A stretch of 64,000 nt of DNA from Anthoceros angustus (GCA_010909165.1 VJWM01000126.1:62001-126000), one strand, 5' to 3'; positions 45,910 through 61,600 are shown, counted from the first letter of the stretch. Numbers and translations: made by a program. The notes: generated by a model from the letters alone, not told the origin.

Positions 45910-48604
45910 AGAAAATCACTAGGACATAGATGTGCCTTTTAGACGTGGCATATGGCCCCGTTAGCTAGAGCAAGTTAAACTTCCTCGAGCAAATTATCTG
46001 TGTGAGACCATTGTTGAAATAAAGTTAAATCAAGGTTAATATTTTTATCAGATAAAATTTGATTGGGAATCTTAAAAATAATACAGATATATTTTCAATA
46101 AATCTTTGAGTTTGGGTTAATAGTCATCGAGTTTTGGCAAACCTGTCGAGTATATATGGAAGGACCTCATGCCCTATGGAGTGGAAGGTCTATCATAGAA
46201 TTTCTTGTTGCTATTAGTGTATGAGTGGAGACGGTCTGCTATATTGTGTGGATCTCGTGGCCTCCGTTTAGTTCTTAGGTTAGATTGATTTTATCATTTT
46301 CTATTATTATTATTATTATTATTATTTATGATAGATTTTAAATATGAAAATTAGAAGTCTAACCATGTAGTAGGAATTGAGTTGAAGAAATTAGGTCGTC
46401 CAAGATTTTGAATTGGGTCTGTTTTGATCTTGTTTTGTTGGATAGGTGAGACATGAATATCTGGTAGCCACAAGAGTAGTGAGGAAGTCAGATCGGTACG
46501 GATTTAGTGTATGGTGGATGAAGTGTGAAAGACCCGGAGGCCGTGTCGAAGGCTCCTGCTCCGAGGAGCTGAAGCCTTTATTTTAATTCGAAATTTGGAC
46601 AAGAAGCAAAGAGAGTCTAGGGTAGTTTGGAGAGAGTCCGGGCGCGATGGGGAAACGTGGGAGACCGAAGAGGTTCGTACCAAGGGTTACTGCAGTTTCA
46701 CTTTTTAACTGGTATGAGTGATATATGTATGTATGTGTGGCGATGCCCCGTAATTGAGAATCGACAGTACCTGGCGGTGTGAGGGCTGGGCTGTGAGTGC
46801 GCTGCGCTACCCTCGGTAATTATGTATGCCGAGGGTACAGAATACAGATGATCATGTTCTTGGATGGTGTGCTTAAGTGCCCTAGGGTTTAAGATGCACA
46901 CTGCGCACCTGGGTGCTCACCCTTGGAAATTGCACTTCCCCACAGGAAGAACACAATGCGTGTTCCGAATGCAGATGCCTCGGATCGCCTTGGCAGTGGC
47001 GATCCCAGCCCCACCAGGTACTTCTTCTGCTCAAGCTGCCGGAAGCTGGGGTTTACGCGATCTCCTGCTGTGCATTGACTGGGTCTCATCTGCTTGGTGA
47101 TGCAGGTCCAAGAGGAGGCAGGTGGCGCTCAGTGCTCGGACCCTTCTTCTGCTGGTTGCTATTTTTTCCCCCTTTTTCCGGTGCTGGTCTGAATTTTCCG
47201 AATTATGCCAGTTTGGAGTGTTTCATTTTCCTGGATTCAGCCTGTCAGCTGGATTGATGTAGAAAATCACTAGGACATAGATGTGCCTTTTAGGCGTGGC
47301 ATATGGCCCGTTAGCTAGAGCAAGTTAAACTTCCTCGAGCAAATTATCTGTGTGAGACCATTGTTGAAATAAAGTTAAATCAAGGTTAATATTTTTATCA
47401 GATAAAATTTGATTGGGAATCTTAAAATAATACAGATATATTTTCAATAAATCTTTGAGTTTGGGTTAATAGTCGAGTTTTGGCAAACACATCGAGTATA
47501 TATGGAAGGACCTCATGCCCTATGGAGTGGAAGGTCTATCATAGAATTTCTTGTTGCTATTAGTGTATGAGTGGAGACGGTCTGCTATATTGTGTGGATC
47601 TCGTGGCCTCCGTTTAGTTCTTAGGTTAGATTGATTTTATCATTTTCTATTATTATTATTATTATTTATGATAGATTTTAAATATGAAAATTAGAAGTCT
47701 AACCATGTAGTAGGAATTGAGTTGAAGAAATTAGGTCGTCCAAGATTTTGAATTGGGTCTGTTTTGATCTTGTTTTGTTGGATAGGTGAGACATGAATAT
47801 CTGGTAGCCACAAGAGTAGTGAGGAAGTCAGATCGGTACGGATTTAGTGTATGGTGGATGAAGTGTGAAAGACCCGGAGGCCGTGTCGAAGGCTCCTGCT
47901 CCGAGGAGCTGAAGCCTTTATTTTAATTCGAAATTTTGGACAAGAAGCAAAAGAGAGTCTAGGGTAGTTTTGGAGAGAGTCCGGGCGCGATGGGGAAACG
48001 TGGGAGACCGAAGAGGTTCGTACCAAGGGTTACTGCAGTTTCACTTTTTAACTGGTATGAGTGATATATGTATGTATGTGTGGCGATGCCCCGTAATTGA
48101 GAATCGACAGTACCTGGCGGTGTGAGGGCTGGGCTGTGAGTGCGCTGCGCTACCCTCGGTAATTATGTATGCCGAGGGTACAGAATACAGATGATCATGT
48201 TCTTGGATGGTGTGCTTAAGTGCCCTAGGGTTTAAGATGCACACTGCGCACCTGGGTGCTCACCCTTGGAAATTGCACTTCCCCACAGGAAGAACACAAT
48301 GCGTGTTCCGAATGCAGATGCCTCGGATCGCCTTGGCAGTGGCGATCCCAGCCCCACCAGGTACTTCTTCTGCTCAAGCTGCCGGAAGCTGGGGTTTACG
48401 CGATCTCCTGCTGTGCATTGACTGGGTCTCATCTGCTTGGTGATGCAGGTCCAAGAGGAGGCGGGTGGCGCTCGGTGCTCCGGACCCTTCTTCTGCTGGT
48501 TGCTATTTTTTCCCCCTTTTTCCGGTGCTGGTCTGAATTTTCCGAATTATGCCAGTTTGGAGTGTTTCATTTTCCTGGATTCAGCCTGTCAGCTGGATTG
48601 ATGT
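45910..48604. repeat. Tandem duplication with ~1.35-kb units (45910-47260 and 47261-48604) covering the ADA2 promoter and exons 1-3
   Basis: Near-identical units, with identical ORFs at 46698/48041 and 46864/48207, and GATGT microhomology at all three boundaries. Confidence 0.92.
46647..47154 (+). pseudogene. Duplicated ADA2 exons 1-3; exon 3 is 1 nt shorter
   Basis: Copy of 47990-48498, with GTGCTCGGAC in place of GTGCTCCGGAC. Confidence 0.75.
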
Positions 48605-51595
48605 GGGAATTTGTTGTCTCTTGCAGCGGCCGGAGAGGGGAAAAGGGCTTTGTTTCACTGCAATTACTGCGGGAGGGATATTTCTGGCAACATTAGAGTG
48701 AAGTGTGCACAATGCAACGATTTTGATCTCTGTCTCGAGTGCTTTTCTGTTGGGGTGGAGCTCACTCCACACAAGAATAATCATGCCTATCGAGTTATTG
48801 TAAGTTCATGGCTTGGTTGGCTACTGCTGTTTCTACTGCTGTCGCTGTCCTTGGGTGCTAATTTGGTTCTGAATCTGCACGTGGCAGGATAATTTGTCCT
48901 TTCCTCTTATCAACCCGGATTGGATGGCTGACGAAGAAATGTTGCTCCTGGAGGTAACTATTCAGTTGTGATGCGGAGCTTCTCTCCTTTTAGATGGGAA
49001 ATTTTGGCTCCAGTTTTCCTGTAGCTTGTGTTTGACAGCGGTTGTGACTTGGGTTTGCAGGGAGTGGAAATGTATGGGTTGGGAAATTGGGCAGAAGTTG
49101 CAGAGCATGTTGGGGTGAAAACCGCGGGAGAGTGTTATGAGCACTATATGGCTGCATATATGGATTCTCCCTGTGCCCCGCTACCCGTAAGCCTCACCAA
49201 ATTTTATAACCTTGTCCTTTGGTTTGGACCGGTGTCCAACCAGGGGTACAGAGCTGGGATTCTGACGTATGTTTGGTGCGCTCTTCAGGATTTAAGCCAC
49301 CTGGCCGGTAAGACAAAGTCTGATCTCCTGGCACTGGCCAAGACGATCACGGAAGGCAAGAGGGGTATGTCATTGGTGCTCTTTCTTGGTGTACTCTGAG
49401 AACTGGCTGCTTTATGCATTGAACTGATTTGTGACCTGTGCAGGTTTCCCTAGTGTCAATGACGGCCTTAAAGTGGTCAAGCAGGAGCCAAGCATTTCAC
49501 CTGCTAGAGGAAGGTGAGAGGCTGTGTTTCCGTTGTTGTTGTCCTTGCTTCAGGGCACTTCTGTCAGTGTCTTGGTCCTTTGTGAAGGCGCCAGTTTTAG
49601 AGTATAGTGGAGCTTTCTGCTCTTCCTTGTGTAATACTTAGAGTGGGCCATGCCTTTCCAGGATGGATGAGGGCAAGGACCGTGATGTTTCAGCAGACAG
49701 GCGCTCACCCTCAACTAATTCAAAAGGTATAGTCTGTCCTCTAGGTGTGGTTGCCACCATGGCACTGTTGAGAGAGTTGAGGGTGTTGAGATGTGCTGTA
49801 AGAGGAAGAATGCATTGAGACAGAAGTGTGTCCGTGATCTTAGACCAGTATTGCTTCTCTGCTTCCAAGAGTGGGGAAGACAAGATTTCTGTTGATGCTG
49901 TTTGCAATCTGCTGTACTCATACTCACCCTGTGAATAGCAGGATTGAAAGATGAAAAGCCTCTGTTCAAGGTCATGTCAAAGCAGGATGATGGAGGAGAA
50001 GGTATTGGTGGTCCATCATCTCATGATCTTGGTGCAGCCAAGGGCACAGTATCTGCAGCTAGGAAGACTGGTGGTGGTCAGACTAGGGAGAACTCCGAAG
50101 GAGCTACTGGGGTTTCTGAGGGTATGTATGTACCTTCAAGATGTGGACTTAAATCGTAAGGTTTGCAGCGTGGAGGTTCCAAGGCTTCATGTCTCTATTG
50201 CTGTTGACCTGTAGATGGTGCCCATAGCAATCGGAGTCTTGGGGTGAAGAAGCCTAAGCCCTCAGCTGAGGATATCAAACCAGGAATCAATGGGATTGAT
50301 CAAAGTGGTTACAATGCAAAACGTGAGGAATTCGACCCCGAGTATGACAATGATGCAGAAGGCCCTTTGGCTGAGATGGATTTCAAAGAGACAGATACTG
50401 AAACTGATCGCGAACTCAAGATACGTATGCTGAATATCTACAATGCGAGGTGAGTACACCCCTGGGAATCATGTTGGCTGTATATCATTCAGTCGGGTTA
50501 TTTGCATGCACTTTGACCTCGAGGGACCCCAATTTTTTGTAGCATGAGACTTAAGCGGACATTTTCCTCTTGATTGCGGCAGAGCCCTAAGTGTGCGCTG
50601 TCTATTTCAGGCTTGATGAGCGGAAGCGGCGCAAGGAGTTTATCTTATCCAGAGGTCTGTTGAATGTCAAAGCCCAGCAAACTCTAGAGAGAAAGAGGTC
50701 CAAGGAAGAGCGGGACCTGCACAATCGTGCTAAGGTTTTTATGAGATACCACTCTCAGGAAGACCATGAAAGCTTGCTTGAGGGGCTGTTAAAAGAACGA
50801 AGGCTGCGGCAAAGAATCGAAGAGTTGCAGGTTAGAGACGCTCCGCAAGATCCGGTGCCTTTAATACTTAATCGTTGTTTTCCAATGTTAATGGCCGAGA
50901 AACCCGAAGATCGTTTAAGACAAGCATTGCGCTTCATTCAGGAACTAAGAAGGGCTGGGTGTCAGACGTTGGGAGAAGGGGAGGCGTATGTCTCGGAGAA
51001 GAAACGGCGAGAAACAGAGGCAAATGCCAGAAAAATGCGGGAAAGCGCATCATATCTTTACCAGGGAAAGGTAGCCCACAGGTCAAACCGATATGTGAAC
51101 AGGGATAGAGACGCTGATCCAACCTCTGCCGGCAACTTGAAGGAGCTCCAAAAGTCCAGGAGCGCCGGTGGCCATCATCCTCTGAGCAGTAGCATGCTGC
51201 CAAGTAGTGGGAGGGGAGCAAGGCGGGAAAACTCGCCGTTAGATCTGTCGGGTCTTTCAGGGACTGAGTTGCTGTCACAAGCAGTACGTCTTCCCGCAAG
51301 CCCCTCTTTCATTTCCCATCTCCTGTTACAAGTACTGCAGGGCCTGATTTGTGATTTGAAATATGCGCAGGAACAGGAGCTGTGCTCACAGGTCAGACTT
51401 TTCCCAACCCACTATCTCCAGATGAAGGAAAAGCTCATGTTGGAAAGCCTGAACAAAGGGCAAGTACGCAGAGCTGTTGCTTATGGCATGTTCAAAGTCG
51501 ACCCTATGAAAACGGACCGTGTTTTTGAGCTGTTGTCGAGTAGGGGATGGATTCAAGGTGACAGTCCGCCAATGCTTCCCCCTCCAGACAGATAG
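47990..51595 (+). CDS. ADA2: Transcriptional adapter ADA2 (SAGA complex), multi-exon
   Basis: ZZ finger HCNYC..RVKCAQC.DFDLCLECFSVG, SANT DW.ADEEMLLLEG.EMYGLGNWAEVAEHVG, REEFDPEYDNDAE, RLDERKRRKEFI, and SWIRM EQELCSQVRL. The first exon (MGKRGRPKR, 47990-48015) is inferred from splice phase. Confidence 0.95.
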
Positions 51596-52289
51596 CATTG
51601 CGTCCGGACCGCACGTACCATTTCAATCCTTTGTACATTAATTCATTGCACGAATTATCGTGCCAAAACTCTCCGCCCAAGCTAGAATTCCGTACGAGCA
51701 TTCTGTACTGAGTGTACCCGGACACAAGACATAGTATGTACTGCACACCAGCCGGTTGGCTTTCAGGTGGAGCCGGCAGCCCAAACGATTCCACTCCCGC
51801 GTTTCATTTGCCGCATTCTTTCGCTTCTGGTCTGGCCGTCGAGATGTGGATCGATTATTGTGGCACCGGTAAATCGAATGATGTCGTGGGGGAGCAAGAG
51901 CTGATTCTGGAGCCCTGGCCTAATGGACTCGTTGGAGAGTCATTCGCTGATGTTCCACGGGAGAAGGCATTGTAGCTGAGTGAAATCTTACAAGACAGTC
52001 TTCGCAGCTTCGGAGGATTTTGATTGTTTTTCAGTATACTATTTCAAAGCGAGGCACTCGGTTGGTGAAATTCCTCTTAGAAGTGGATTTGATCATGATG
52101 CTTCAGCAATGTTCACAGGGATGGCCAGGTTTGCTTGCTCTGGACTCTGTGCCCGCACCTGTTCTCCGTGTCCACTCTCATTGTAAAATCTGTAGACCTA
52201 CTTCTTATTGACTGGTAAATGTTGCTGATGCCACAGGTGGGGATGAGGTAACTCACTCCAACGGTGTAGATGGAAATGTGGACGTGCAC

Positions 52290-54012
52290 ATGCCTGATGC
52301 CACTAGTCTTATAGGTTGGCAGCCACCTCCTGGGGAAGGTGAAGCTAAGCTGGATCTCGTGGTGTTAAGTGCTTCTGAATCAGACTATGAGTATTCCAGC
52401 GAAGAAGAGATTGACGAGGACATCGAAGGGGAATCAGATGATGAACATGGAGAGGAGGGCAGCGCAATCTTGGTAATCCATGAATGCAGAATTTGTGCAG
52501 CTTGAGCGTTCGGTTACGGGAACGAGGGATTGTTTCTTACGCTTCGACTTGCAGACAGCTGTGACACTAATGGAGACAGACGAGGAGATTCAGGAAGAAA
52601 TTGATGCTCTGTTGCAGCTTGAAAGCGAGGTGATATTTGAATTCCCTCTCAGCAAACATAATTTGACATTGTGAAGTGTGACCATCAGTTGAGCCGCGCT
52701 AATGTGCCTCCAAAATTCTTACTCAATCGTAGTACAAATTTCCTGTAGGCGGCGGAACTGCAGGAGATGTTGGAAGAGGAGTCATTGGATTGTGTTAGAT
52801 GTGAAGCGACATTGGAGCTGTCTGAAAAATTTGCAGATCCTGACAAGGTGAGTTATGATTTTCAGCAGTGGCACAACTGGGTGTCTGAAGTGCTTAACTT
52901 GATGTGGAGGGTGCTGTGTCCACCTGCACAGCGCAGCTGGCTGCAGCAACTGAGAAGGAGATGTATACCTATCAAAACATTGTGGAGGAAGACCTGCTCG
53001 AAGTTGAAGCGTACATTATCGGCATACAGGTAACTCCAGTTGTTTGATCGAGAATCTCATATCTACCTCTACGCGTGCGTGTGCAATACATGTGCCTCCA
53101 CTGGATCTCGGCCCAGGGCGCGGGAAAAGAAAAAAAATGCTGAACTGCTTTTCGTTCAGGAACGGTTGGATGCTGCTGGGATCAGCCTGCCCGCCATATA
53201 TAAGGAGATTGAGAAGCTGGCTCCAGATCACTGCAAAACGAATGCATGGAAGAAGAGGGCGCACTGGGCTGGCTTGCAGGAAACATCGGAGGTACTCAGT
53301 ATCATTAAGGACGCAGAGTCTGAGTTGGAGAACAGCAGACCTGTGACGAGGTCAGTGCATGCATTCCCAACAACCTACGGTGAACGTTTTTAAATGTGGC
53401 CAGTTTTGTGAGAGATAAGTAATTGGCAATGCGCAAAGTAACACACCGTATGGTGCATCGATCAGGCTTCGTGGAAGGAGCTTTGAAGCTGGAGCTAGCG
53501 GCATGCTGGCCAAGAAGTTTGGCCTATCCACTAGTGCAGATGCTCCAGTGGCTCAGGGATGGAGAGCATTTGATGCTCGAACGGATGCTGATGCAGATGC
53601 TAAGATATACGGGGCATCCACACCTCAGCAAGCAGCTCAAGTACTGGGCCCCGGAGTTCCAGCAGCTGATGAGGTTCGTTCAAATTTGTGAACACCAGGA
53701 TCAAATAAAATTGTTTAGACGGGTGTAAACTTACAGCCAAGTCTCGACTAGGTGGAGGAGATTTCGGAATGGGAAGACGCGGCAGGACCATTCTCTGAAG
53801 CCCTAAAGAACGAGGGAGAAAACGGTCTTACAAAGACACAGCGAGAGAACCTCAAGAAGGTAATCAACGATATTTTGAATTCGGGTCAGGCCCGGTGGTA
53901 GTTATCTCACAGGCCTGTCGAGAATCTCTGTTTGCAGATTGACGAACAGAATGATGCTCGCAAGTACACAACAGTGAAACCAAGCAAACGCAAAGGCGAA
54001 TGGCAGCAGTAA
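52290..54012 (+). CDS. Stand-alone N-terminal region of plant ATRX (CHR20-like), copy A; 8 exons, 343 aa; no ADD or SNF2 domain
   Basis: Exons 52290-52472, 52555-52629, 52749-52847, 52937-53029, 53160-53350, 53466-53673, 53752-53859 and 53938-54012 give an open frame. It contains EEIDALLQLESEAAELQEMLEEESL, LDAAGISLPAIYKEIE..TNAWKKRAHWAG, GASGMLAKKF and ASTPQQAA..VEEI, matching the plant ATRX N-terminus as recalled. Confidence 0.85.
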
Positions 54013-54079
54013 ACAGGTTTATGTCACCACCTCACAGATTCTAGAACAACCTATGCGAGTTCGAGGCTTCCAGAAGCTT

Positions 54080-54960
54080 AACTCCCTTGGGAGCCCGAGG
54101 TGTTGCCTCTGGAGAAAAATTTGAGGGTTCTGGAGCTGGCAGAATGGATAGGTTAAGTACTATAACACCGACATACAAATCCAAAGTTCGGCACCTTTCA
54201 TACTTGCCATGGTCATTTTGGACGATTTAGGAGTGCTAGCAATTCAATCCTAGAGTCCAGTACACCGTTTGCTTTAGATGCAAGATGTACCCATCAGAGG
54301 AACTTCACATCTCTACCTTGTCAGCTCGCTTAGCTTTGTGTTCACCTATATCTGCATTTTCTTTTTTTCTTTTAACCCCCTTAGCGCTGTAGCTTGAGCA
54401 TGTGGATTTCTTTCCTCCAGTCTGAAAGCTCTAGCAGCTTCTTGCAACGGTATAGCACGGCCAGGCAGACTATATGGTCAGGGCAACTTTAAGAAATGAC
54501 ATCCCACGGAAACGAGACGAGCAAGGTTGCAGTGCAATGCTGGTCTCACCCTAGTTTTGGAACCAGTGAAATCGCGTCCACACTTAGTTTTGAAACCAGT
54601 GAAGCCACGTCTATACCAGCTCCACATGCAATGCAAACCCTCTGCAAAGACCTCCCAGCTTAGAGATGACACTTACTTCAGGGAATGACACTTCAGAGGT
54701 CATTCGAGGTCTTCACATGCTTAATCTATAAACATATCCATCAATGAAGTATTATAGTTTTGTATATACTTTTAAAAAGTTCCACCTCCAAATACACGGC
54801 AAGAGAAGCTATCTTAGCATAGCACCACTAAGCAGCAAGAAGTGGAAAATCATGGGTCCCTTGACCACACTAGTTTTCACGAGATTAAGTATCATGTTCT
54901 TATGCATCTTTGCTCCCTAAACAATGGAGTAAAACTAGAAGGCAGCTGAAAAAAATGAAG
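54080..54960 (-). pseudogene. Partial duplicate of the 3' half of the 2OG-fold/U-box gene
   Basis: Colinear with 59070-59935, including exons and introns. The segment equivalent to about 58010-59070 is missing. Confidence 0.85.
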
Positions 54961-55519
54961 CAAATATAAAATATTTACAAAACTAGAAGTGCATTAAAAA
55001 AAGTAAAGTATAAAATGATTGTTTACAACAATACATTTCTCAGCCAAGGTTATAAGATGTCTCTAAATAGTAAAAACAAATTTCACAACCGCTTAGTAAA
55101 ATGCTTTTAGAATTCAGTATTGTGTAGAGTATCACAAGGCACGATTTTTCGTTATCCCTCATCCTCTTTACGTGAAGAATGAACATTAGCACGCCAGCCA
55201 AAGAGCTGTAGAAAATCTAATCTAGTCCTCATACGTCAAGAGAAGATTTAAAAACTCCAATCTAGTCTTTAATTAATAGGTTGGATATTGATGTCATGTT
55301 GTGGTTGAAACTTTTAAAGAGGTTATCTATTGTTGACACGCCCATAACAATGAGATGACATATGCTTGATGTAAATTCCTAATATAAATCATAGAATGAA
55401 TACTAGTATCAAAACATTTCTTTGTGGATAGACCAATCATCCCTTTAGCTCAAACACAAAACATGAACGAGTACAATTAAAGAGGTGAACATATGGAGAG
55501 GTGTTGAATTCTAAAGCGT

Positions 55520-55537
55520 CATATATATATGTATATA

Positions 55538-55582
<45 letters not shown>

Positions 55583-55675
55583 GTATATATATATGTATAT
55601 ATATATATATTATATGTATATGTATGTGTGTGTAAGAGATCTCTCTTTCTATATATATATTGAAAGAGAGAGATA
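55520..55675. repeat. Compound (TA)n/(TATATATG)n/(GA)n microsatellite
   Basis: Directly visible, at the boundary of duplicated block B. Confidence 0.95.
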
Positions 55676-55834
55676 TTGAACCCTAAAGCGAGATGGACCG
55701 AGATTTGCTTGCTCTGGACTCTGTGCCCGCACCTGCTCTCCATATCTACTCCCACCTTGGTAAATGTTGCTGATGCCAGAGGTGGGGATGGGGTAACCCA
55801 CTCCATCGGTGTAGATGGAAATGTGGATGTGCAC

Positions 55835-57955
55835 ATGCCGGATGCAAATATTCTTATACCTTTGCAGCCACCTCCGGAGAAGGTGAAGCTAAGCTGGATC
55901 TTGTGGTGTTTAGTGATTCGGAATCAGACTCAAAGCATTCCAGCGAAAAACAGGTTGACAAGGACATGGAAGGAAAATCAGATGATGAACATGGAGAGAG
56001 GGACAGCGAAAAACATGGAGAGGAGGAGTGCAAAAGGGCTGATGACATTATTTATTTGGGTTGGCATCCACCTCCTGGGAAAGGTGAAGCTAAGCTGGAT
56101 GTCGTGGTGTTAAGTGATTCTGAATCAGACTCTGAGTATCCCAGCAAAGGAAATGTTGACGAGGACATGGAAGGAAAACCAGATGATGAACATGGAGAGA
56201 GGGACAGCGAAAAATATGGAGAGGAGGAGACCAAAATGGCTGATGCCATTATTTATTTAGGTTGGCATCCACCTCCTGGGGAAGGTGAAGCTAAGCTGGA
56301 TCTCGTGGTGTTAAGTGATTCTGAATCAGACTCTGAGGATCCCAGCAAAGGAAATGTTGAGGAGGACATCGAAGGAAAATCAGATGATGAACATGGAGAG
56401 GAGGACAGCGAAATCTTCTGGGTAATCCATGAATGCAGAATTTGTGCAGCTTGAGCGTTCGGTGATGGGGACAAGGAATTGTTTCTTACGCTTGGATTTG
56501 CAGACACCTGGGACACTATTAGAGACAGACGAGGAGATTCAGGAAGAAATTGATGCTCTGTTGCAGCTTGAAAGCGAGGTGATATTTGAATTCCTTCTGA
56601 GCAAACATAATTTGACAGTGTGAAGTGTGACCATCAGTTGCGCCGGGCTAATGTCCCTCCAAAATTCTTACTCAATCGCAGTATACATTTCCTGTAGGCG
56701 GCGGAACTGCAGGAGAAGTTGGAAGAGGAGTCATTGGCTCGTGTTAGATGTGAAGCCAGATTGGAGTTATCTGAAAAATTCGCAGATCCTGACAAGGTGA
56801 GTTATGATTTTCCGCAGTGGCACCACTGGGTGTCTACGTGCTTAACTTGATGTCGAGGGTGCTGTGTCCACCTGCACCAACGCAGCTGGCTGCAGAAACT
56901 GAGGAGGAGCTGTCTACTTATCAAAACAATGTGAAGGAACGCCTGCTCGTAGTTGAAGAAGAAATTAGCGACAGACAGGTACCTCCAGTGGCCTGGTTGA
57001 GAATCTCATATCTACCTCTACGCGTGCGTGCGCAATACATGTGCCTTCACTGGATCTCGGCCCAGCTATGCGCGGGAAAAGAATAATCCTGAGCTGCTTG
57101 TCTTCAGGAACGGTTGGATGCTGCTGGTATCAGCCTGCCCGCCATATATAAGGAGATTGAGAAGCAGACTCTAGATCACTGCAGAACGGATGCATGGAAG
57201 AAGAGAGCGCACTGGGCTGGCTTGCAGGAAACATCGGAGGTACTCAGTATCATTAAGGACGCAGAGTCTGAGTTGGAGAAGAGCAGACCTGTGACGAGGT
57301 AAGCGCATGCATTAGCAACAACCTACAGTGAACGTTTTTAAATGTGACCAGTTTTATGAGAGATGAGTAATTGGCAATGCGCCAAAGTAACACACCGTAT
57401 GGTGCATCGATCAGGCTTCGTGGAAGGACCTTTGAAACTGGAGCTAGCGGAATGCTTGCCAAGAAGTTTGACCTACCCTCTAGTGCAAATGCTCCAGTGG
57501 ATCAGGGATGGAGAGCATTTGATGCTCGGACGGAGGCTGATGCAGACGCTAAGATATACGGGGCATCCACACCACAGGAAGCAGCTCAAGTACTGGGCCC
57601 CGAAGTTCCAGCTGCTAATGAGGTTCGTTCAAATTTGTGAATACCAGGATCAAATAAAATTTTGTTGAGGATTGTGAACTCACAGCCACGTCTCGCGTAG
57701 GTGGAGGAGATTTCGGTATTGGAAAACGCGGCACCTTTCTCTGAAGCCCTTCAGAACGAGGGAGGGAACGGTCTTACAAATACACAGCGAGAGACCCTCA
57801 AAAAGGTAATCAACAATGCTTGAATTCGGGTCCGGCGCAGTAAAACCCCACAGCCTGTCAATAATCTCTGTTTGCAGGTTGACGAACAGAATGTGCTCGC
57901 AAGTACACAGAGAGCACTGAAATCAAGCAAACGCAAAGGCGAATGGCAGCAGTAA
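55835..57955 (+). CDS. Stand-alone ATRX N-terminal gene, copy B, with an expanded acidic exon 1 and one apparent 1-nt deletion near 55875
   Basis: Same 8-exon structure and splice sites as copy A, same stop context (SKRKGEWQQ*), and exons 2-8 open. Confidence 0.78.
55860..56400 (+). repeat. 201-nt (67-codon) coding tandem repeat, about 2.7 units
   Basis: GGTTGGCATCCACCTCCTGGG at 56059 and 56260. The unit encodes GWHPPPG.GEAKLD.VVLSDSESDSE...DDEHGE.DSE. Confidence 0.9.
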
Positions 57956-58623
57956 ACAATTTTGTCAACACCTCACAGATTCTAGAACAACCTCCGCGAG
58001 TTCGATGCTTCCAGAAGCATAATGGGTCGCGAGCAACGACAGGGAACGCACTCGGAGGCTACTTTCAAGACGGAACAGTTACGTGGAAACCAAATGTACG
58101 TTCGGACAGAAACGACAATGTGTTTGTTGCAAAAATCCAGCCTTTACATTTTCATGAACGACGCTCCTGCAACCTGAGCTTTCTTTGCCCAGCTGCAAAA
58201 TGAGAAACGAAAGGAGATGGTCAATATCGGGTACGACACTGCCCCATGGCCCATTGCAGTTAGCAAACCTCATGTCTTATGCCAAAATAAATGAGAAATG
58301 TAAAATATTCCCAATGATCTTCTCACACAAGCAGTCATGGATTGGACGGACCAACAATTGAACCTACAGCTAAGAAAATTTACGATGGGTCAGTCTATGA
58401 AATGTGGCCTGACATACATACTCAGACAAAAGTAAGGGACAAGCAGCCGCGGTGAAATCACCTCATATATACATATGAGAAGAAGAACATGTACACTATT
58501 GCCGCAAGAAATTACCCTCCAAAAGACATCCCTTCCAAGGCCTGCATAAAGTACATAATTGGCATAACGAGTTAACTCTCTTGTATGACCGGTCCTCTTT
58601 TCTACATATACCCTGGTAACGGG

Positions 58624-61600
58624 TCACAAGTCCGCCGAGTGCGCTTGTCTATCTTCGCTGACCCCATTCTTCAACTCAGTTGTTGCCTTTGCAAGAGAAC
58701 GATACTGTAATCTCAAACTCTCCGAGTTGTCCACCATTGTTACTAAATACCTGAAGGTGATCAGAACCAGGATTAGCACAGAGAAGCTGGGCACGAAAAG
58801 CCAGAAGAGAGCCTATTCAAAAACAAAAGCGCCTCGTACCAGCCATTTAGACACTTATTTGTCACAACAGCTTCTCGTCCGACATATTTCCCTGCAGTCC
58901 TTTTGTTGCCCTGTACATTGTATGATGAGTAATGGCAAAGTCAAAATCAAGGAGTCAATCTAACCACATACAAAGCATGCACACACTGCAATCAAAACTC
59001 CTCACCAAATCAACCAGAAAAGGCAAGTCACCTTAATCATAACCCTTTCATTCACGGCAAAGGGGTACTGAACTCCCTTGGGAGGCCGAGGTGTTGCCTC
59101 TGGAGAAGAATTTGAGGGTTCTGGAGCTGGCAGAATGGATAAGTTACTCTACAACACCGACAGACAAATTCAAGGTTAGACACCTTCACACTTGCCCTGG
59201 TCATTCTGGGCAATTTACGAGGGCTAGCAATTCAATCCTAAAGTCCAGTACATCTTTTGCTTTAGATGCAAGATGTACCCATCCGAGGAACTTCACATAT
59301 CTATACCTTATTAGCTCGCTTAGCTTTGGGTTCACCAATATCTGCAATTTCTTTTTTTCTTTTAACCCCCCTTAGAACTGTAGCTTGAGCGTGTCGAGTT
59401 CTTTCCTCCCGTCTGAAAGCTCTAGCAGCTGCTTGCAACGCTGTAGCACAGGCAGGCAGACTACAGTTAGGAAAATATCAAGGAATGACATCCCACTGAA
59501 ATGAGACATGCAGGGTGTGCAATGCTGGTCCCACCATAGTTTGGAACAAGTGAATTCACGTCCACACCAGCTCCACATGAGATGCAGACCCTCTGCAAAA
59601 ATGTCCCAGGTTAGATTTCCACGAGTGGACTAAAACCCCTACAGAGGTCACTCGTTGTTTTCACATTCATGCCACGCTTTATCTACGAACAGATCCATGA
59701 AATAAGGTCTTACAGTTTCGTATACTCTTTGAAGAGTTCCACCTCCAAATGAATGGCCACAGGGAGCCACCTTAGCATCCTCTAGCAGAGCCCCACTACA
59801 AACCAAGCAAGTGGAAAATCATGGATCCCTCAACCATGCTAGTTTTCAAGAGGCAAGTACCGTGTTCTCAGGCACCTTTCCTCCCTAAACAATGGCAGCA
59901 AAACCAGAAGTGCGCTGAAAAAAGGAGGGAAGTACAAAATGATTACTTACGTCAGCGGATCAGATAGTACATTTCTCAGCGAAGGTTCTGAGCTGCCTCT
60001 AGCTGGCTCCTAAATAACAAAAGCAGATTCCACAACCGGCTTAATCCAGAGCTCAGTACAATCAAAATTGACAGCATAAGACACAGCAAAGACTGATCAC
60101 CCCCGACGATATGCATCCATCTCATGGGGGTCCAAGATTAAAGGATGACAGTTACCAGAGCTTTGTCTGCACCATTTCCCATCAATGCCTCTGCTGCCTT
60201 CAAGCCTTCCATAAACTGACTCACTAAGACAGGGGAAAACCCCTCAGGCACAGGATGTCCCGCCTCCGCAAGAGACGTGCAGTCAATTGTTGCAGAGTCC
60301 CGCGGCACCATCCGAAATGTCATAGAAATCCTGTACTAATGACCATAACATAAGCTAGTGGGGTAGGGAAGGAAAACGAAGATCACGGCACAGAACTGAC
60401 AAACTGTTTGGTTCACCACAGTCAAACACTACGTCAGTTACCCAAGCTATTGACCACCGTGTGACAAGGAACACACCTTCCGACAGGGCCAGAGGTGGAA
60501 GGATTAGATGAGGGCACTGGTACAACACGAAAGGCTGAAGACTTTCGAAGGCCGGCAGTTGCTTGGTGGAGGGCCCTGCCAACAAGCAGCAGCAGATCAC
60601 CTGGACCGAGTCCACTGTCTGCTAAGTACCACCGACCACTAGAATCACACACCTGCAAATTGGAGAGCAGCATCTTAGACATCCCCAACCGCCTGGCCTC
60701 CTCTTACCTTCTTCATTCCTCATGGAGAAAGCACCCAGTTCTACTGAAAAGAAGCTTGTCAAGACTAAAATTATGTGATGCGTGTGACGATGCAAATCTA
60801 GCGCATACAGCCTACAAGGATTAAAATTACCTGCAAACCAGGAGAATCAGATGCAATTAACCTTAGCAGCCCCTTCTCCACATCCTGGCCATGAAATGTG
60901 TCGCCTCCATGATGGGTCTTAGCAAGGGAAGAAGAAGTGAAATGCGCAGCTGCAGTCAAAACTGAATGGGACACTTCGCCAGGCACCAAAGGAGAGTCAT
61001 CTAACAGCGGACAGAATGCGCTGCATAACAAACAAGGCACGAGTTGAGACTAATGCAGGCGAATGGAGTAGCCATCAAGAGCAGAAAGTCAAAACCAGAA
61101 AATGATAGCGCAAACAACGTCTTACTCGCTTCGAAGTTGAAGATGTCTCGCAATGGCACTCAAACAAGCTCTAGATGCTTTTCCGAGGCATCTAAATGCC
61201 TCAGGCATACAAGGTGGTGGAGGGTCAGAGCCTTCACCTGCAGAAATTCTGCGCAGGTGCACAGCGATTAAGAGACAAAGCAGTCAAACGAGGCAGGTCC
61301 ACGGCCACAAAGCTCAGATGCCTAATAGCAGCAGCGTGCCCCAGCCAAGCATCCAGATGATTGTGAAGACGTACCTCCCAGCTCGATAACAGTAAATGGA
61401 TTGAGCCGCAGTAGTCAAGTAGCCAGAGGATTTACCCTGGTCCGACGCATGCCAGGGATGCGACGCCTCCACACCCTGGGCCCTGCTTCTAAAATACAAC
61501 CTGGAGGACTCCAGGGCACATCTCATGAGTGCTGCGTCCTCCCCATTGAGCTCTATAATAGCTGCATTGTTTTTGGCCAGAGACTGCGAGAGCATCTCCA

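What the first reader, a model, noticed from the sequence alone, without database searches (positions are those of the whole stretch)
52290..57955. Two tandem, fully spliced genes encoding only the N-terminal domain of ATRX
Both copies keep all 7 introns' splice sites and open exons while differing by many substitutions and an in-frame 3-nt indel. Both stop at the same place, before the ADD finger and SNF2 ATPase that define ATRX. A conserved stand-alone ATRX-N protein is not something I know to be described. It could act as a decoy or adaptor for partners of full-length ATRX in H3.3 deposition or silencing (inference). This is the best candidate for a new system in the window.
Basis: partly seen in the sequence, partly recalled or inferred. 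Interest (0 to 1): 0.78.

Follow-up and report, generated by a model that had tools for sequence, protein, structure and literature searches.

The report
Truncated ATRX gene, duplicated in tandem
A non-flowering (probably hornwort-like) plant carries two side-by-side copies of a gene made only of the first exons of the chromatin remodeler ATRX; one copy is transcribed and correctly spliced, but the two copies have drifted apart almost neutrally, so a working "ATRX head-only" protein is possible and not shown.

Summary
Copy A (52290-54012) and copy B (56236-57955) each have 8 coding exons, 7 canonical GT..AG introns and a TAA stop at the same homologous place.

Homology to the plant ATRX/CHR20 N-terminus is significant. 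Exon 5 alone gives E 1e-11 to 1e-15 against 1.84 billion proteins. No ADD or SNF2 exon lies anywhere in the 64 kb. The stop falls exactly where exon 8 of the full-length Riccia ATRX gene ends, so each copy is cut at the former intron-8 donor.

RNA contigs match all of copy A's introns without a mismatch, reveal one more upstream intron, and keep the stop. They do not splice onward.

Copy B is not an equal twin. It lacks A's upstream exon and promoter side, its exon 1 is tripled, its first ATG is out of frame, and its exons 1-7 have no RNA cover.

A versus B looks nearly neutral: dN/dS 0.95, flat codon positions, symmetric rates. Yet both frames and all splice sites survive (P about 0.01 and 0.03).

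I found no verified stand-alone counterpart elsewhere. The parent full-length ATRX of this genome could not be searched. The decoy or adaptor function remains speculation.

Verdict: an expressed truncated ATRX paralogue, a new variant of a known kind, of moderate interest.

The parts
52095..52128 (+). Copy A: end of an upstream exon. It holds an in-frame ATG at 52095 and a donor after 52128. The exon's 5' limit is unknown because the laid stretch began at 52100.
   Evidence: RNA joint 52128->52237 with GT..AG. The frame is open from 52095 across the joint.
52129..52236 (+).
   Evidence: joint 52125->52234 (cut +3)
52237..52472 (+). Copy A: acidic Ser/Asp/Glu-rich exon.
   Evidence: joint 52471->52554
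52555..52629 (+). Copy A coding exon 2 (start of the conserved ATRX-N helix).
52749..52847 (+). Copy A coding exon 3.
52937..53029 (+). Copy A coding exon 4. The acceptor is at 52936/52937, five bases after the first possible AG.
   Evidence: the loose end at 52935 reads the end of exon 3
53160..53350 (+). Copy A coding exon 5, the best conserved ATRX-N block.
53466..53673 (+). Copy A coding exon 6.
53752..53859 (+). Copy A coding exon 7.
53938..54012 (+). Copy A coding exon 8 with stop TAA 54010-54012. The stop lies where the matching exon of the full-length Riccia ATRX gene meets its intron.
53981..54015 (+). 35-nt stretch identical to 57925-57959 in copy B. The RNA contig passes here from A into B's 3' flank.
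   Evidence: joint 53980->57924, both = 35
54077..54978 (.). Repeat-like flank of copy A, 77% identical to 59068-59946. A related copy elsewhere in the genome is highly expressed.
   Evidence: (record 4)
55701..55863 (+). Left edge of copy B. It corresponds to A from 52127 on, so A's upstream exon and promoter side are absent. The ATG at 55835 is out of frame.
55864..56413 (+). Copy B: 201-nt exon 1 unit repeated 2.7 times, all in frame. The ATG homologous to A's is at 56236, and exon 1 ends at 56421.
56504..56578 (+). Copy B exon 2.
56698..56796 (+). Copy B exon 3.
56886..56978 (+). Copy B exon 4 (82% identical to A's, the most diverged exon).
57108..57298 (+). Copy B exon 5.
57415..57622 (+). 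Copy B exon 6.
57701..57805 (+). Copy B exon 7 (one codon shorter than A's).
57878..57955 (+). Copy B exon 8 with a compensated -1/+4 frame shift relative to A, and stop TAA 57953-57955.
57960..58194 (+). 3' flank of copy B found in RNA, joined to copy A's exons. From 58023 it lies in a 1046-nt segment (58023-59068) that copy A lacks. The end at about 58194 is inferred from the 104 contig letters beyond 58090.

Best explanation
This is an unprocessed, truncated copy of the plant ATRX/CHR20 gene that was later duplicated in tandem. A DNA-level event kept the gene's 5' part: an upstream exon plus the 8 coding exons for the acidic leader and the conserved helical 'ATRX-N' region. It cut the gene in the intron that precedes the large ADD-containing exon. 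Reading then stops at a TAA sitting on the former exon-8 donor.

A segment of about 3.6 kb starting inside the first intron was then duplicated head to tail. That gave copy B, which lacks A's first exon and promoter side. Later B tripled its 201-nt exon 1 unit.

Copy A is transcribed and spliced as modelled. It would give a protein of 343 aa, or 372 aa from the ATG at 52095. That protein has an acidic Ser/Asp/Glu leader, a confidently predicted long helical hairpin and a short basic tail, but no histone-reading ADD finger and no ATPase.

Shown here: homology, exon-for-exon correspondence, truncation point, transcription and splicing of A, and near-neutral divergence of A and B.

Inferred: since the tandem duplication the coding sequence has been under little or no amino-acid constraint. 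The pair is therefore most likely a young, expressed gene fragment (A) and a largely silent twin (B), perhaps kept alike in patches by gene conversion. If the product does anything, the likeliest mode is stoichiometric: the ATRX-N helices would bind whatever the same region binds in full-length ATRX, without bringing remodeling activity.
For: - ATRX identity: exon 5 (63 aa) hits 50 proteins at E<=1e-3 and 19 at E<=1e-10 among 1.84e9. The long hits carry ADD_ATRX, SNF2-rel_dom and Helicase_C and are named ATRX/CHR20 in Kingdonia, Ceratopteris, Nymphaea, Riccia and Diphasiastrum.
- The window's exons 2-7 align colinearly with ATRX residues about 43-317.
- Full-length ATRX queries hit only these exons in the 64 kb.
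- The Riccia fluitans ATRX gene has the same exon series. Its matching 27-aa exon ends where the window has TAA.
- RNA contigs of run X1 reproduce all introns of A with 0 mismatches and run through the stop into a 3' untranslated stretch.
- Copy B homology starts at 52127, inside A's first intron. B's exons 1-7 have zero RNA depth.
- Exon identity is 91.2% against 88.1% in introns. dN/dS is 0.95, or 0.71 for exons 2-7. Differences by codon position are 34/35/32. N versus S gives Fisher p 0.80. A-specific and B-specific changes at conserved sites are 10 and 12.
- Divergence is mosaic: chi-square p 0.005 over 100-nt bins, and the far flank is only 77% identical.
- A keeps 68 and B 66 of 84 positions that are >=90% conserved in ATRX-N, similar to bona fide liverwort ATRX at 77-78%.
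- The ATRX-N model has pLDDT 92-98 over its first ~100 residues, as long helices.
Against: - Both frames are intact after 101 coding differences (P about 0.014), all 28 splice dinucleotides are kept (P about 0.03), and every coding indel preserves or restores the frame. That argues for some selection on an open, spliceable frame in both copies.
- Exons are slightly more alike than introns (Fisher p 0.04).
- The parent full-length gene of this genome was not available. So 'partial duplicate' cannot be told from 'remnant or split of the only ATRX gene', and the age of the truncation is unknown.
- Only one small RNA run (about 30 million letters, kept as contigs) was available, so silence of B is weakly supported.
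- The RNA contig joins A's exons to B's 3' flank, which the reference arrangement does not predict.
Confidence: 0.62

Rival explanations
1. Both copies are maintained, functional genes for a stand-alone ATRX-N protein. It would act as a trans-acting regulator (decoy, adaptor or dominant-negative partner, in the manner of a microProtein) that competes with or bridges partners of full-length ATRX. Its sequence would be fast-evolving or under diversifying selection.
For: - Open frames, intact splice sites and frame-preserving indels in both copies.
- A compensated -1/+4 shift in exon 8.
- 79-81% of near-invariant ATRX-N positions are kept.
- A is expressed and spliced.
- The exon 1 comparison shows 21 non-synonymous against 1 synonymous difference.
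- Plant ATRX sits in a stable complex with PKL and DNAJ proteins, so partners to compete for exist (preprint 10.64898/2026.08.25.747133).
Against: - dN/dS does not differ from 1, and codon positions are flat.
- There is no rate asymmetry and no excess conservation at conserved sites.
- B lacks A's first exon and has no RNA over exons 1-7.
- No verified stand-alone orthologue was found.
- No binding partner of the plant ATRX-N region is known from what I read.
- The locus was picked because both frames are open, which weakens the P values.
Confidence: 0.2
2. Gene fission: in this lineage ATRX is split. Copy A would be the only source of the N-terminal region and would work in trans with an ADD-SNF2 protein encoded elsewhere.
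For: - Conservation of ATRX-N positions in A and B is as high as in true liverwort ATRX.
- No closer ATRX N-terminus turned up in any database searched.
- Selaginella moellendorffii also has ATRX-N-only gene models with no ADD/SNF2 downstream.
Against: - An essential subunit should show dN/dS well below 1 between duplicates. It does not.
- The databases simply lack this organism. Its ADA2 is absent too, so the missing parent means nothing.
- The Selaginella models look degenerate and are not syntenic with this window.
Confidence: 0.07
3. The tandem pair is not fixed, or not real as assembled. The plant that gave the RNA carries a single hybrid gene (A's exons followed by B's 3' flank). That would mean the duplication is polymorphic, was collapsed by unequal crossing-over, or is an assembly error. 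This concerns the arrangement and does not exclude the other readings.
For: - One RNA contig reads A exons 5-8, then B's 3' flank, with 0 mismatches on both sides.
- A's own flank 54016-54079 and B's exons 1-7 have zero depth. The bin depths fit this exactly.
- The joint has no GT..AG, so it is not a splice (sequence).
Against: - The data are k=31 graph contigs. A 35-nt identical stretch can join two transcripts once short dead ends are clipped.
- A and B differ by 10% with private indels and a private 402-nt expansion, which does not look like an assembly duplicate.
Confidence: 0.15
4. These are simply the first exons of a normal full-length ATRX gene whose ADD and SNF2 exons lie further downstream.
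For: The exon series matches the 5' part of full-length ATRX genes.
Against: - No ADD or SNF2 match occurs anywhere in the window, including the 6 kb after copy B.
- An in-frame TAA is kept in the RNA, which continues as untranslated sequence.
- Copy A is followed by repeats and then by copy B.
Confidence: 0.02

Closest known systems
Plant ATRX / CHROMATIN REMODELING 20 (CHR20)
   Same: - Exons 2-8 are homologous and colinear with the conserved N-terminal region. Identity is 40-43% over about 260 residues, and exon 5 reaches 50-61%.
- Intron positions match the Riccia gene.
   Different: It lacks the ADD_ATRX finger, the SNF2 ATPase and Helicase_C, which are the parts that define ATRX activity. 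The product is 343-372 aa instead of about 1300-1700 aa.
Mammalian ATRXt, the truncated ATRX isoform (PMC13074095)
   Same: It is an ATRX product without the SWI/SNF motor, ending where an intron begins. ATRXt arises by retention of intron 10. Here the stop sits on the former intron-8 donor.
   Different: - ATRXt comes from the full-length gene by alternative processing, and it keeps the ADD domain and the DAXX and HP1 binding regions.
- Here there is a separate locus with no downstream exons, and the product stops before ADD.
- The plant N-terminal region was not shown to be homologous to any mammalian ATRX part.
Plant microProteins, e.g. LITTLE ZIPPER and miP1a/b (PMC9638782, PMC4807768)
   Same: The concept is the same: a short protein derived from one interaction region of a larger multi-domain protein, able to titrate that protein or its partners.
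   Different: - MicroProteins are defined as below about 20 kDa with a single domain. This product is about 38-41 kDa.
- No interaction has been tested.
- The sequence evolution here gives no sign of constraint.
Unprocessed partial gene duplicates / expressed pseudogenes
   Same: - Introns are retained.
- The copy is truncated at an intron.
- It lies in tandem.
- Divergence is neutral-like.
- One copy lacks its promoter side.
   Different: There are no disabling mutations in either copy, and copy A is correctly spliced and expressed.
Selaginella moellendorffii ATRX-N-only gene models (SELMODRAFT_408746 and SELMODRAFT_421130; P0023, P0101)
   Same: These loci carry ATRX N-terminal exons with no ADD/SNF2 exons in the 10 kb downstream.
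   Different: - Identity to copy A is only 36%.
- They are not syntenic with the window.
- The models end in unaligned, intron-like tails and differ between the two haplotypes.
- An isolated SNF2 fragment lies upstream.
- In the tree they group with Diphasiastrum, not with A and B.

Membership tests
ATRX / CHR20 (SNF2-family remodeler) | Plant-type conserved N-terminal region | tested here: met
ATRX / CHR20 (SNF2-family remodeler) | ADD (ATRX-DNMT3-DNMT3L) cysteine-rich finger | tested here: not met
   Pfam finds nothing on the 8 exons. No tblastn match to ATRX residues beyond about 454 in the 64 kb. Full-length relatives do have ADD_ATRX.
ATRX / CHR20 (SNF2-family remodeler) | SNF2-related ATPase plus Helicase_C | tested here: not met
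ATRXt-type truncated isoform | Product lacks the SNF2 motor and ends at a retained intron of the ATRX gene | tested here: inconclusive
   The motor is absent, and the stop lies at the former exon 8 donor. But there is no full-length gene at this locus, so this is not an isoform.
ATRXt-type truncated isoform | Keeps the ADD domain and the partner-binding middle region | tested here: not met
microProtein | Small (below about 20 kDa) single-domain protein | tested here: not met
   343 aa, or 372 aa from ATG 52095. Definition from PMC9638782.
microProtein | Related to one region of a larger multi-domain protein | tested here: met
microProtein | Binds the parent protein or its partners and alters their activity | not testable with these tools
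   Needs co-IP, yeast two-hybrid or genetics.
Unprocessed pseudogene / gene fragment | Neutral sequence evolution | tested here: met
   dN/dS 0.95, codon positions 34/35/32, Fisher p 0.80
Unprocessed pseudogene / gene fragment | Disabling mutations (stops, frameshifts, lost splice sites) | tested here: not met
   There are none in the homologous coding exons of A or B. The only defects are B's frame-shifted first exon 1 unit and its missing upstream exon.
Unprocessed pseudogene / gene fragment | No expression | tested here: inconclusive
   A is expressed and spliced. B's exons 1-7 have no cover in one small run, while B's 3' flank is present in RNA.

The most novel reading that the evidence does not exclude
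This early-diverging land-plant lineage keeps, by selection, a stand-alone 'head-only' ATRX protein made of the acidic leader plus the ATRX-N helical region. It would work in trans on the ATRX/H3.3 pathway, either as a competitor or adaptor for ATRX partners or as a split-off subunit. Amino-acid turnover would be fast while the frame is preserved. That would make the so far uncharacterised plant ATRX N-terminal region an autonomous functional module.
Probability: 0.2. Interest if true: 0.65.

Novelty: new variant of a known kind. Interest (0 to 1): 0.4.

Why it matters
The region of plant ATRX upstream of the ADD finger is conserved from streptophyte algae to flowering plants. It has no Pfam family, its predicted structure found no match among solved structures, and I found no described function for it.

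A naturally occurring, expressed gene that encodes only this region would be a ready-made tool for asking what the region binds and whether it acts without the motor. Mammalian ATRXt suggests that some ATRX roles do not need the motor (PMC13074095).

If the protein is not maintained, the locus is still a clean example of how an intron-truncated partial duplicate gets a stop codon from a former splice donor and stays spliceable. That would be an ordinary early step in gene birth or death.

Tried and rejected
- Pfam on each exon of copy A: nothing.
- Pfam on neighbouring ORFs and on B's repeat ORF: nothing.
- Word searches with profile alignments that carried the window's exons as separate rows. 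The short length range and the full-length range gave no protein more than 61% identical to the window's exons. None was marked as the window's own.
- ADA2 exon search to name the organism. The best hits are only 42-49% identical (Selaginella and an unnamed JGI protein), so this genome's proteome is not in the database. Other agents' notes call the genome hornwort-like. My tree is compatible with that but cannot show it, because no hornwort or moss ATRX was available.
- The idea that short 'CHR20-like' proteins in databases show a widespread stand-alone ATRX-N or an intron-retention isoform is rejected for those I opened. Papaya is a split gene model with an SNF2 model 4 kb downstream. Two Logan contigs are full-length mRNAs with a frame break that read on into ADD in another frame.
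- Synteny between the window and the Selaginella ATRX-N loci: none.
- Foldseek of the ATRX-N model against the PDB: no match at E<=0.001, only generic helical bundles.
- The A-to-B joint in RNA as a splice: rejected, because no GT..AG is possible in the shared 35 nt.
- Earlier-findings look-ups for ATRX or a full-length remodeler in this genome: nothing usable.
- Papers on ATRX in hornworts: none. One broad paper search was wasted.
- The bacterial-type promoter scan is irrelevant to a plant gene.

- The joined spliced protein was never sent to a search or folding tool.
- Exons were joined only inside local scripts. That covered translation, dN/dS, BLAST against proteins already fetched, the relative-rate test and the tree.
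- Read laying was given 5991 letters.

Full report
**What is there**

The window is plant nuclear DNA with short GT..AG introns. Downstream of an ADA2-type gene lie two head-to-tail homologous blocks. The ADA2 gene spans about 48611-51595 and has ZZ, SANT and SWIRM-like exons. The blocks are 52127-54978 and 55701-59946.

In block A, eight exons flanked by AG and GT join into an open frame of 343 codons, from ATG 52290 to TAA 54010-54012. In block B, the homologous exons join into 344 codons, from ATG 56236 to TAA 57953-57955, with every splice dinucleotide kept.

Three details differ.
- The coding indels are +3 (end of exon 1), -3 (exon 7) and a compensated -1/+4 pair in exon 8.
- B's exon 1 is a 201-nt unit present 2.7 times (55864-56413). 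All units are in frame, but the first ATG (55835) is put out of frame by a 1-nt deletion.
- A has one more intron upstream (52129-52236). With it removed, the frame stays open back to an ATG at 52095, so the protein may be 29 residues longer. B's homology begins at the position matching 52127, inside that intron. B therefore has neither that exon nor what lies upstream of it.

**Is it ATRX?**

Pfam sees nothing in the exons. Exon 5 alone (63 aa), scored by HMMER against 1.84 billion representatives, finds 50 proteins at E<=1e-3 and 19 at E<=1e-10. The long ones (1237-1726 aa) match it at residues about 120-300. They carry ADD_ATRX, SNF2-rel_dom and Helicase_C further on. They are named ATRX or CHROMATIN REMODELING 20 in Kingdonia, Ceratopteris, Nymphaea and Riccia. 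Shorter hits include Diphasiastrum and the alga Spirogloea.

An alignment by reference shows exons 2-7 colinear with the conserved N-terminal region. Locally, the joined product is 40-43% identical to ATRX N-termini over residues 69-328. Full-length ATRX queries hit only these exons in the whole 64 kb, with no ADD and no SNF2.

The gene structure settles the nature of the end. In the Riccia fluitans ATRX gene, the exons for residues 158-459 correspond one to one with the window's exons 2-8. The 27-aa exon matching exon 8 is followed by an intron and then by the large exon that holds ADD. The window's TAA lies exactly at that exon end. So both copies are ATRX cut in the former intron 8, with the stop supplied at the old donor.

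**Expression**

One public run holds part of the stretch. Its contigs, laid on 52100-58090, reproduce the first intron and six of copy A's seven coding introns as GT..AG joints, with no mismatch. The remaining intron (52848-52936) shows as a loose end at 52935 that reads the end of exon 3. Splicing shows that the run is RNA.

The contig covering exons 5-8 keeps the TAA and continues for about 270 nt without further splicing. Copy B's exons 1-7 have zero depth.

One thing is unexplained. After the 35 nt that A and B share around the stop, the contig follows B's 3' flank (57960-58090 and beyond). That includes a segment that A lacks (58023-59068). A's own flank is uncovered, and the bin depths fit this exactly. 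The joint cannot be a splice. Either the plant that gave the RNA has a single hybrid gene (unequal crossing-over, polymorphism or assembly error), or the k=31 assembly graph joined two transcripts.

**Selection**

Over the aligned gene, A and B differ at 10% of sites. Exons differ at 8.8% and introns at 11.9% (Fisher p 0.04). Other measures:

| Measure | Result |
|---|---|
| dN/dS, Nei-Gojobori, all codons | 0.95 |
| dN/dS, exons 2-7 | 0.71 |
| Non-synonymous vs synonymous | 78 vs 23, not different from neutral (p 0.80) |
| Differences by codon position | 34/35/32 |
| Transitions vs transversions | 44 vs 57 |
| Changes at sites conserved in 35 ATRX N-termini | A 10, B 12 |

By these measures neither copy has been constrained since they split. 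Against that, no stop arose in 101 differences (simulation P 0.014). All 28 splice dinucleotides survive (P 0.03). All coding indels keep or restore the frame. The locus was chosen because it is open, which weakens these P values but does not remove them.

Divergence is mosaic: 4% in exon 5, 18% in exon 4 and intron 4, 22% in intron 7 and 23% in the far flank. Heterogeneity over 100-nt bins gives p 0.005. This fits patchy gene conversion between the copies.

Over the longer term, A keeps 68 and B 66 of 84 near-invariant ATRX-N positions. That is about what true liverwort ATRX keeps. Most losses are shared by A and B. In a tree, A and B sit together on a long stem near the base of land plants. 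They do not group with Selaginella, ferns or seed plants, and no hornwort or moss sequence was available.

**Relatives and novelty**

Neither word searches nor the exhaustive search found any protein closer than 61% to exon 5. This genome's own proteins, ADA2 included, are not in the database. The parent full-length ATRX of this organism therefore could not be looked for. This is the main gap.

Many short 'CHR20-like' entries exist. Those I opened are artefacts: a split papaya model with an SNF2 model just downstream, and two frame-broken full-length mRNAs. Selaginella moellendorffii does have ATRX-N-only loci without downstream ADD/SNF2. They are distant, not syntenic with this window, look degenerate, and have an SNF2 fragment upstream.

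The ATRX-N region modelled from a 52-row alignment is helical. It has a very confident long hairpin in the first ~100 residues and no significant match among solved structures.

The closest known things are:
- mammalian ATRXt, a motor-less isoform made by intron retention that still has ADD and binds DAXX and HP1 (PMC13074095);
- plant microProteins (PMC9638782, PMC4807768);
- ordinary unprocessed partial duplicates.

Plant ATRX forms a complex with PKL and DNAJ proteins (preprint 10.64898/2026.08.25.747133). Which part of ATRX binds them is not stated there.

**Verdict**

The locus is a truncated ATRX gene, duplicated in tandem. Copy A is a real spliced mRNA encoding an ATRX 'head' without reader finger or motor. 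Copy B is a promoter-side-less twin with an expanded acidic repeat.

The evidence favours a young expressed fragment under little amino-acid constraint (about 0.6). It is weaker for a maintained regulator (about 0.2) or a split subunit (below 0.1). This is a new variant of a known kind, a motor-less ATRX product encoded by a separate gene and lacking ADD. It is worth a follow-up in the genome itself, but it is not yet a new system.

Noticed in passing
window 45957-48609: A 1.34-kb segment is present twice in tandem at 98-100% identity, with identical ORFs at 46698-47257 and 48041-48696. It ends right at the first ZZ-finger exon of the ADA2-like gene. This is a very recent duplication of the gene's 5' region or promoter.
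   Followed up: partly
window 48611-51595 (+): An ADA2-type transcriptional adaptor gene (ZZ, SANT/Myb and SWIRM-like exons). Its closest database relatives are only 42-49% identical (Selaginella, an unnamed JGI protein). This shows that the organism's proteome is not in the protein collection.
   Followed up: partly
window 54080-54641 and 59068-59946: Repeat family flanking both ATRX-N copies (77% identical to each other). A 2910-nt RNA contig of depth about 100 matches 54080-54641 in interrupted pieces with several mismatches, so another copy elsewhere in the genome is strongly transcribed.
   Followed up: no
window 53981-54015 / 57925-57959 and 57960-58194: An RNA contig passes from copy A's exon 8 into copy B's 3' flank through a 35-nt identical stretch. 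Copy A's own flank has no RNA. This is either a hybrid gene in the RNA-source plant or an assembly-graph chimera.
   Followed up: partly
window 55516-55676: (TA)n/(TATG)n microsatellite and AT-rich spacer (54979-55700) between the two copies. It has no counterpart after copy B.
   Followed up: no
L008 4976-5428 and 10131-10991; L009 10444-11156 (Selaginella moellendorffii): Both haplotypes carry ATRX N-terminal exons with no ADD/SNF2 downstream. In L008 an isolated SNF2-domain fragment lies about 5 kb upstream on the same strand. This looks like a fragmented or decaying ATRX locus. Whether Selaginella has an intact ATRX elsewhere was not checked.
   Followed up: partly
L011 (Carica papaya), L012, L013 (Logan RNA contigs): Database proteins labelled 'CHROMATIN REMODELING 20-like' of 300-400 aa are artefacts in the cases opened. 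One is a split gene model followed by an SNF2 model. Two are full-length mRNAs with a frame break that continue into the ADD finger in another frame.
   Followed up: yes
window 52270-52314: A 14-codon upstream ORF in another frame overlaps ATG 52290, and the same holds in copy B. It matters only if translation starts at 52290 rather than at the upstream ATG 52095.
   Followed up: no
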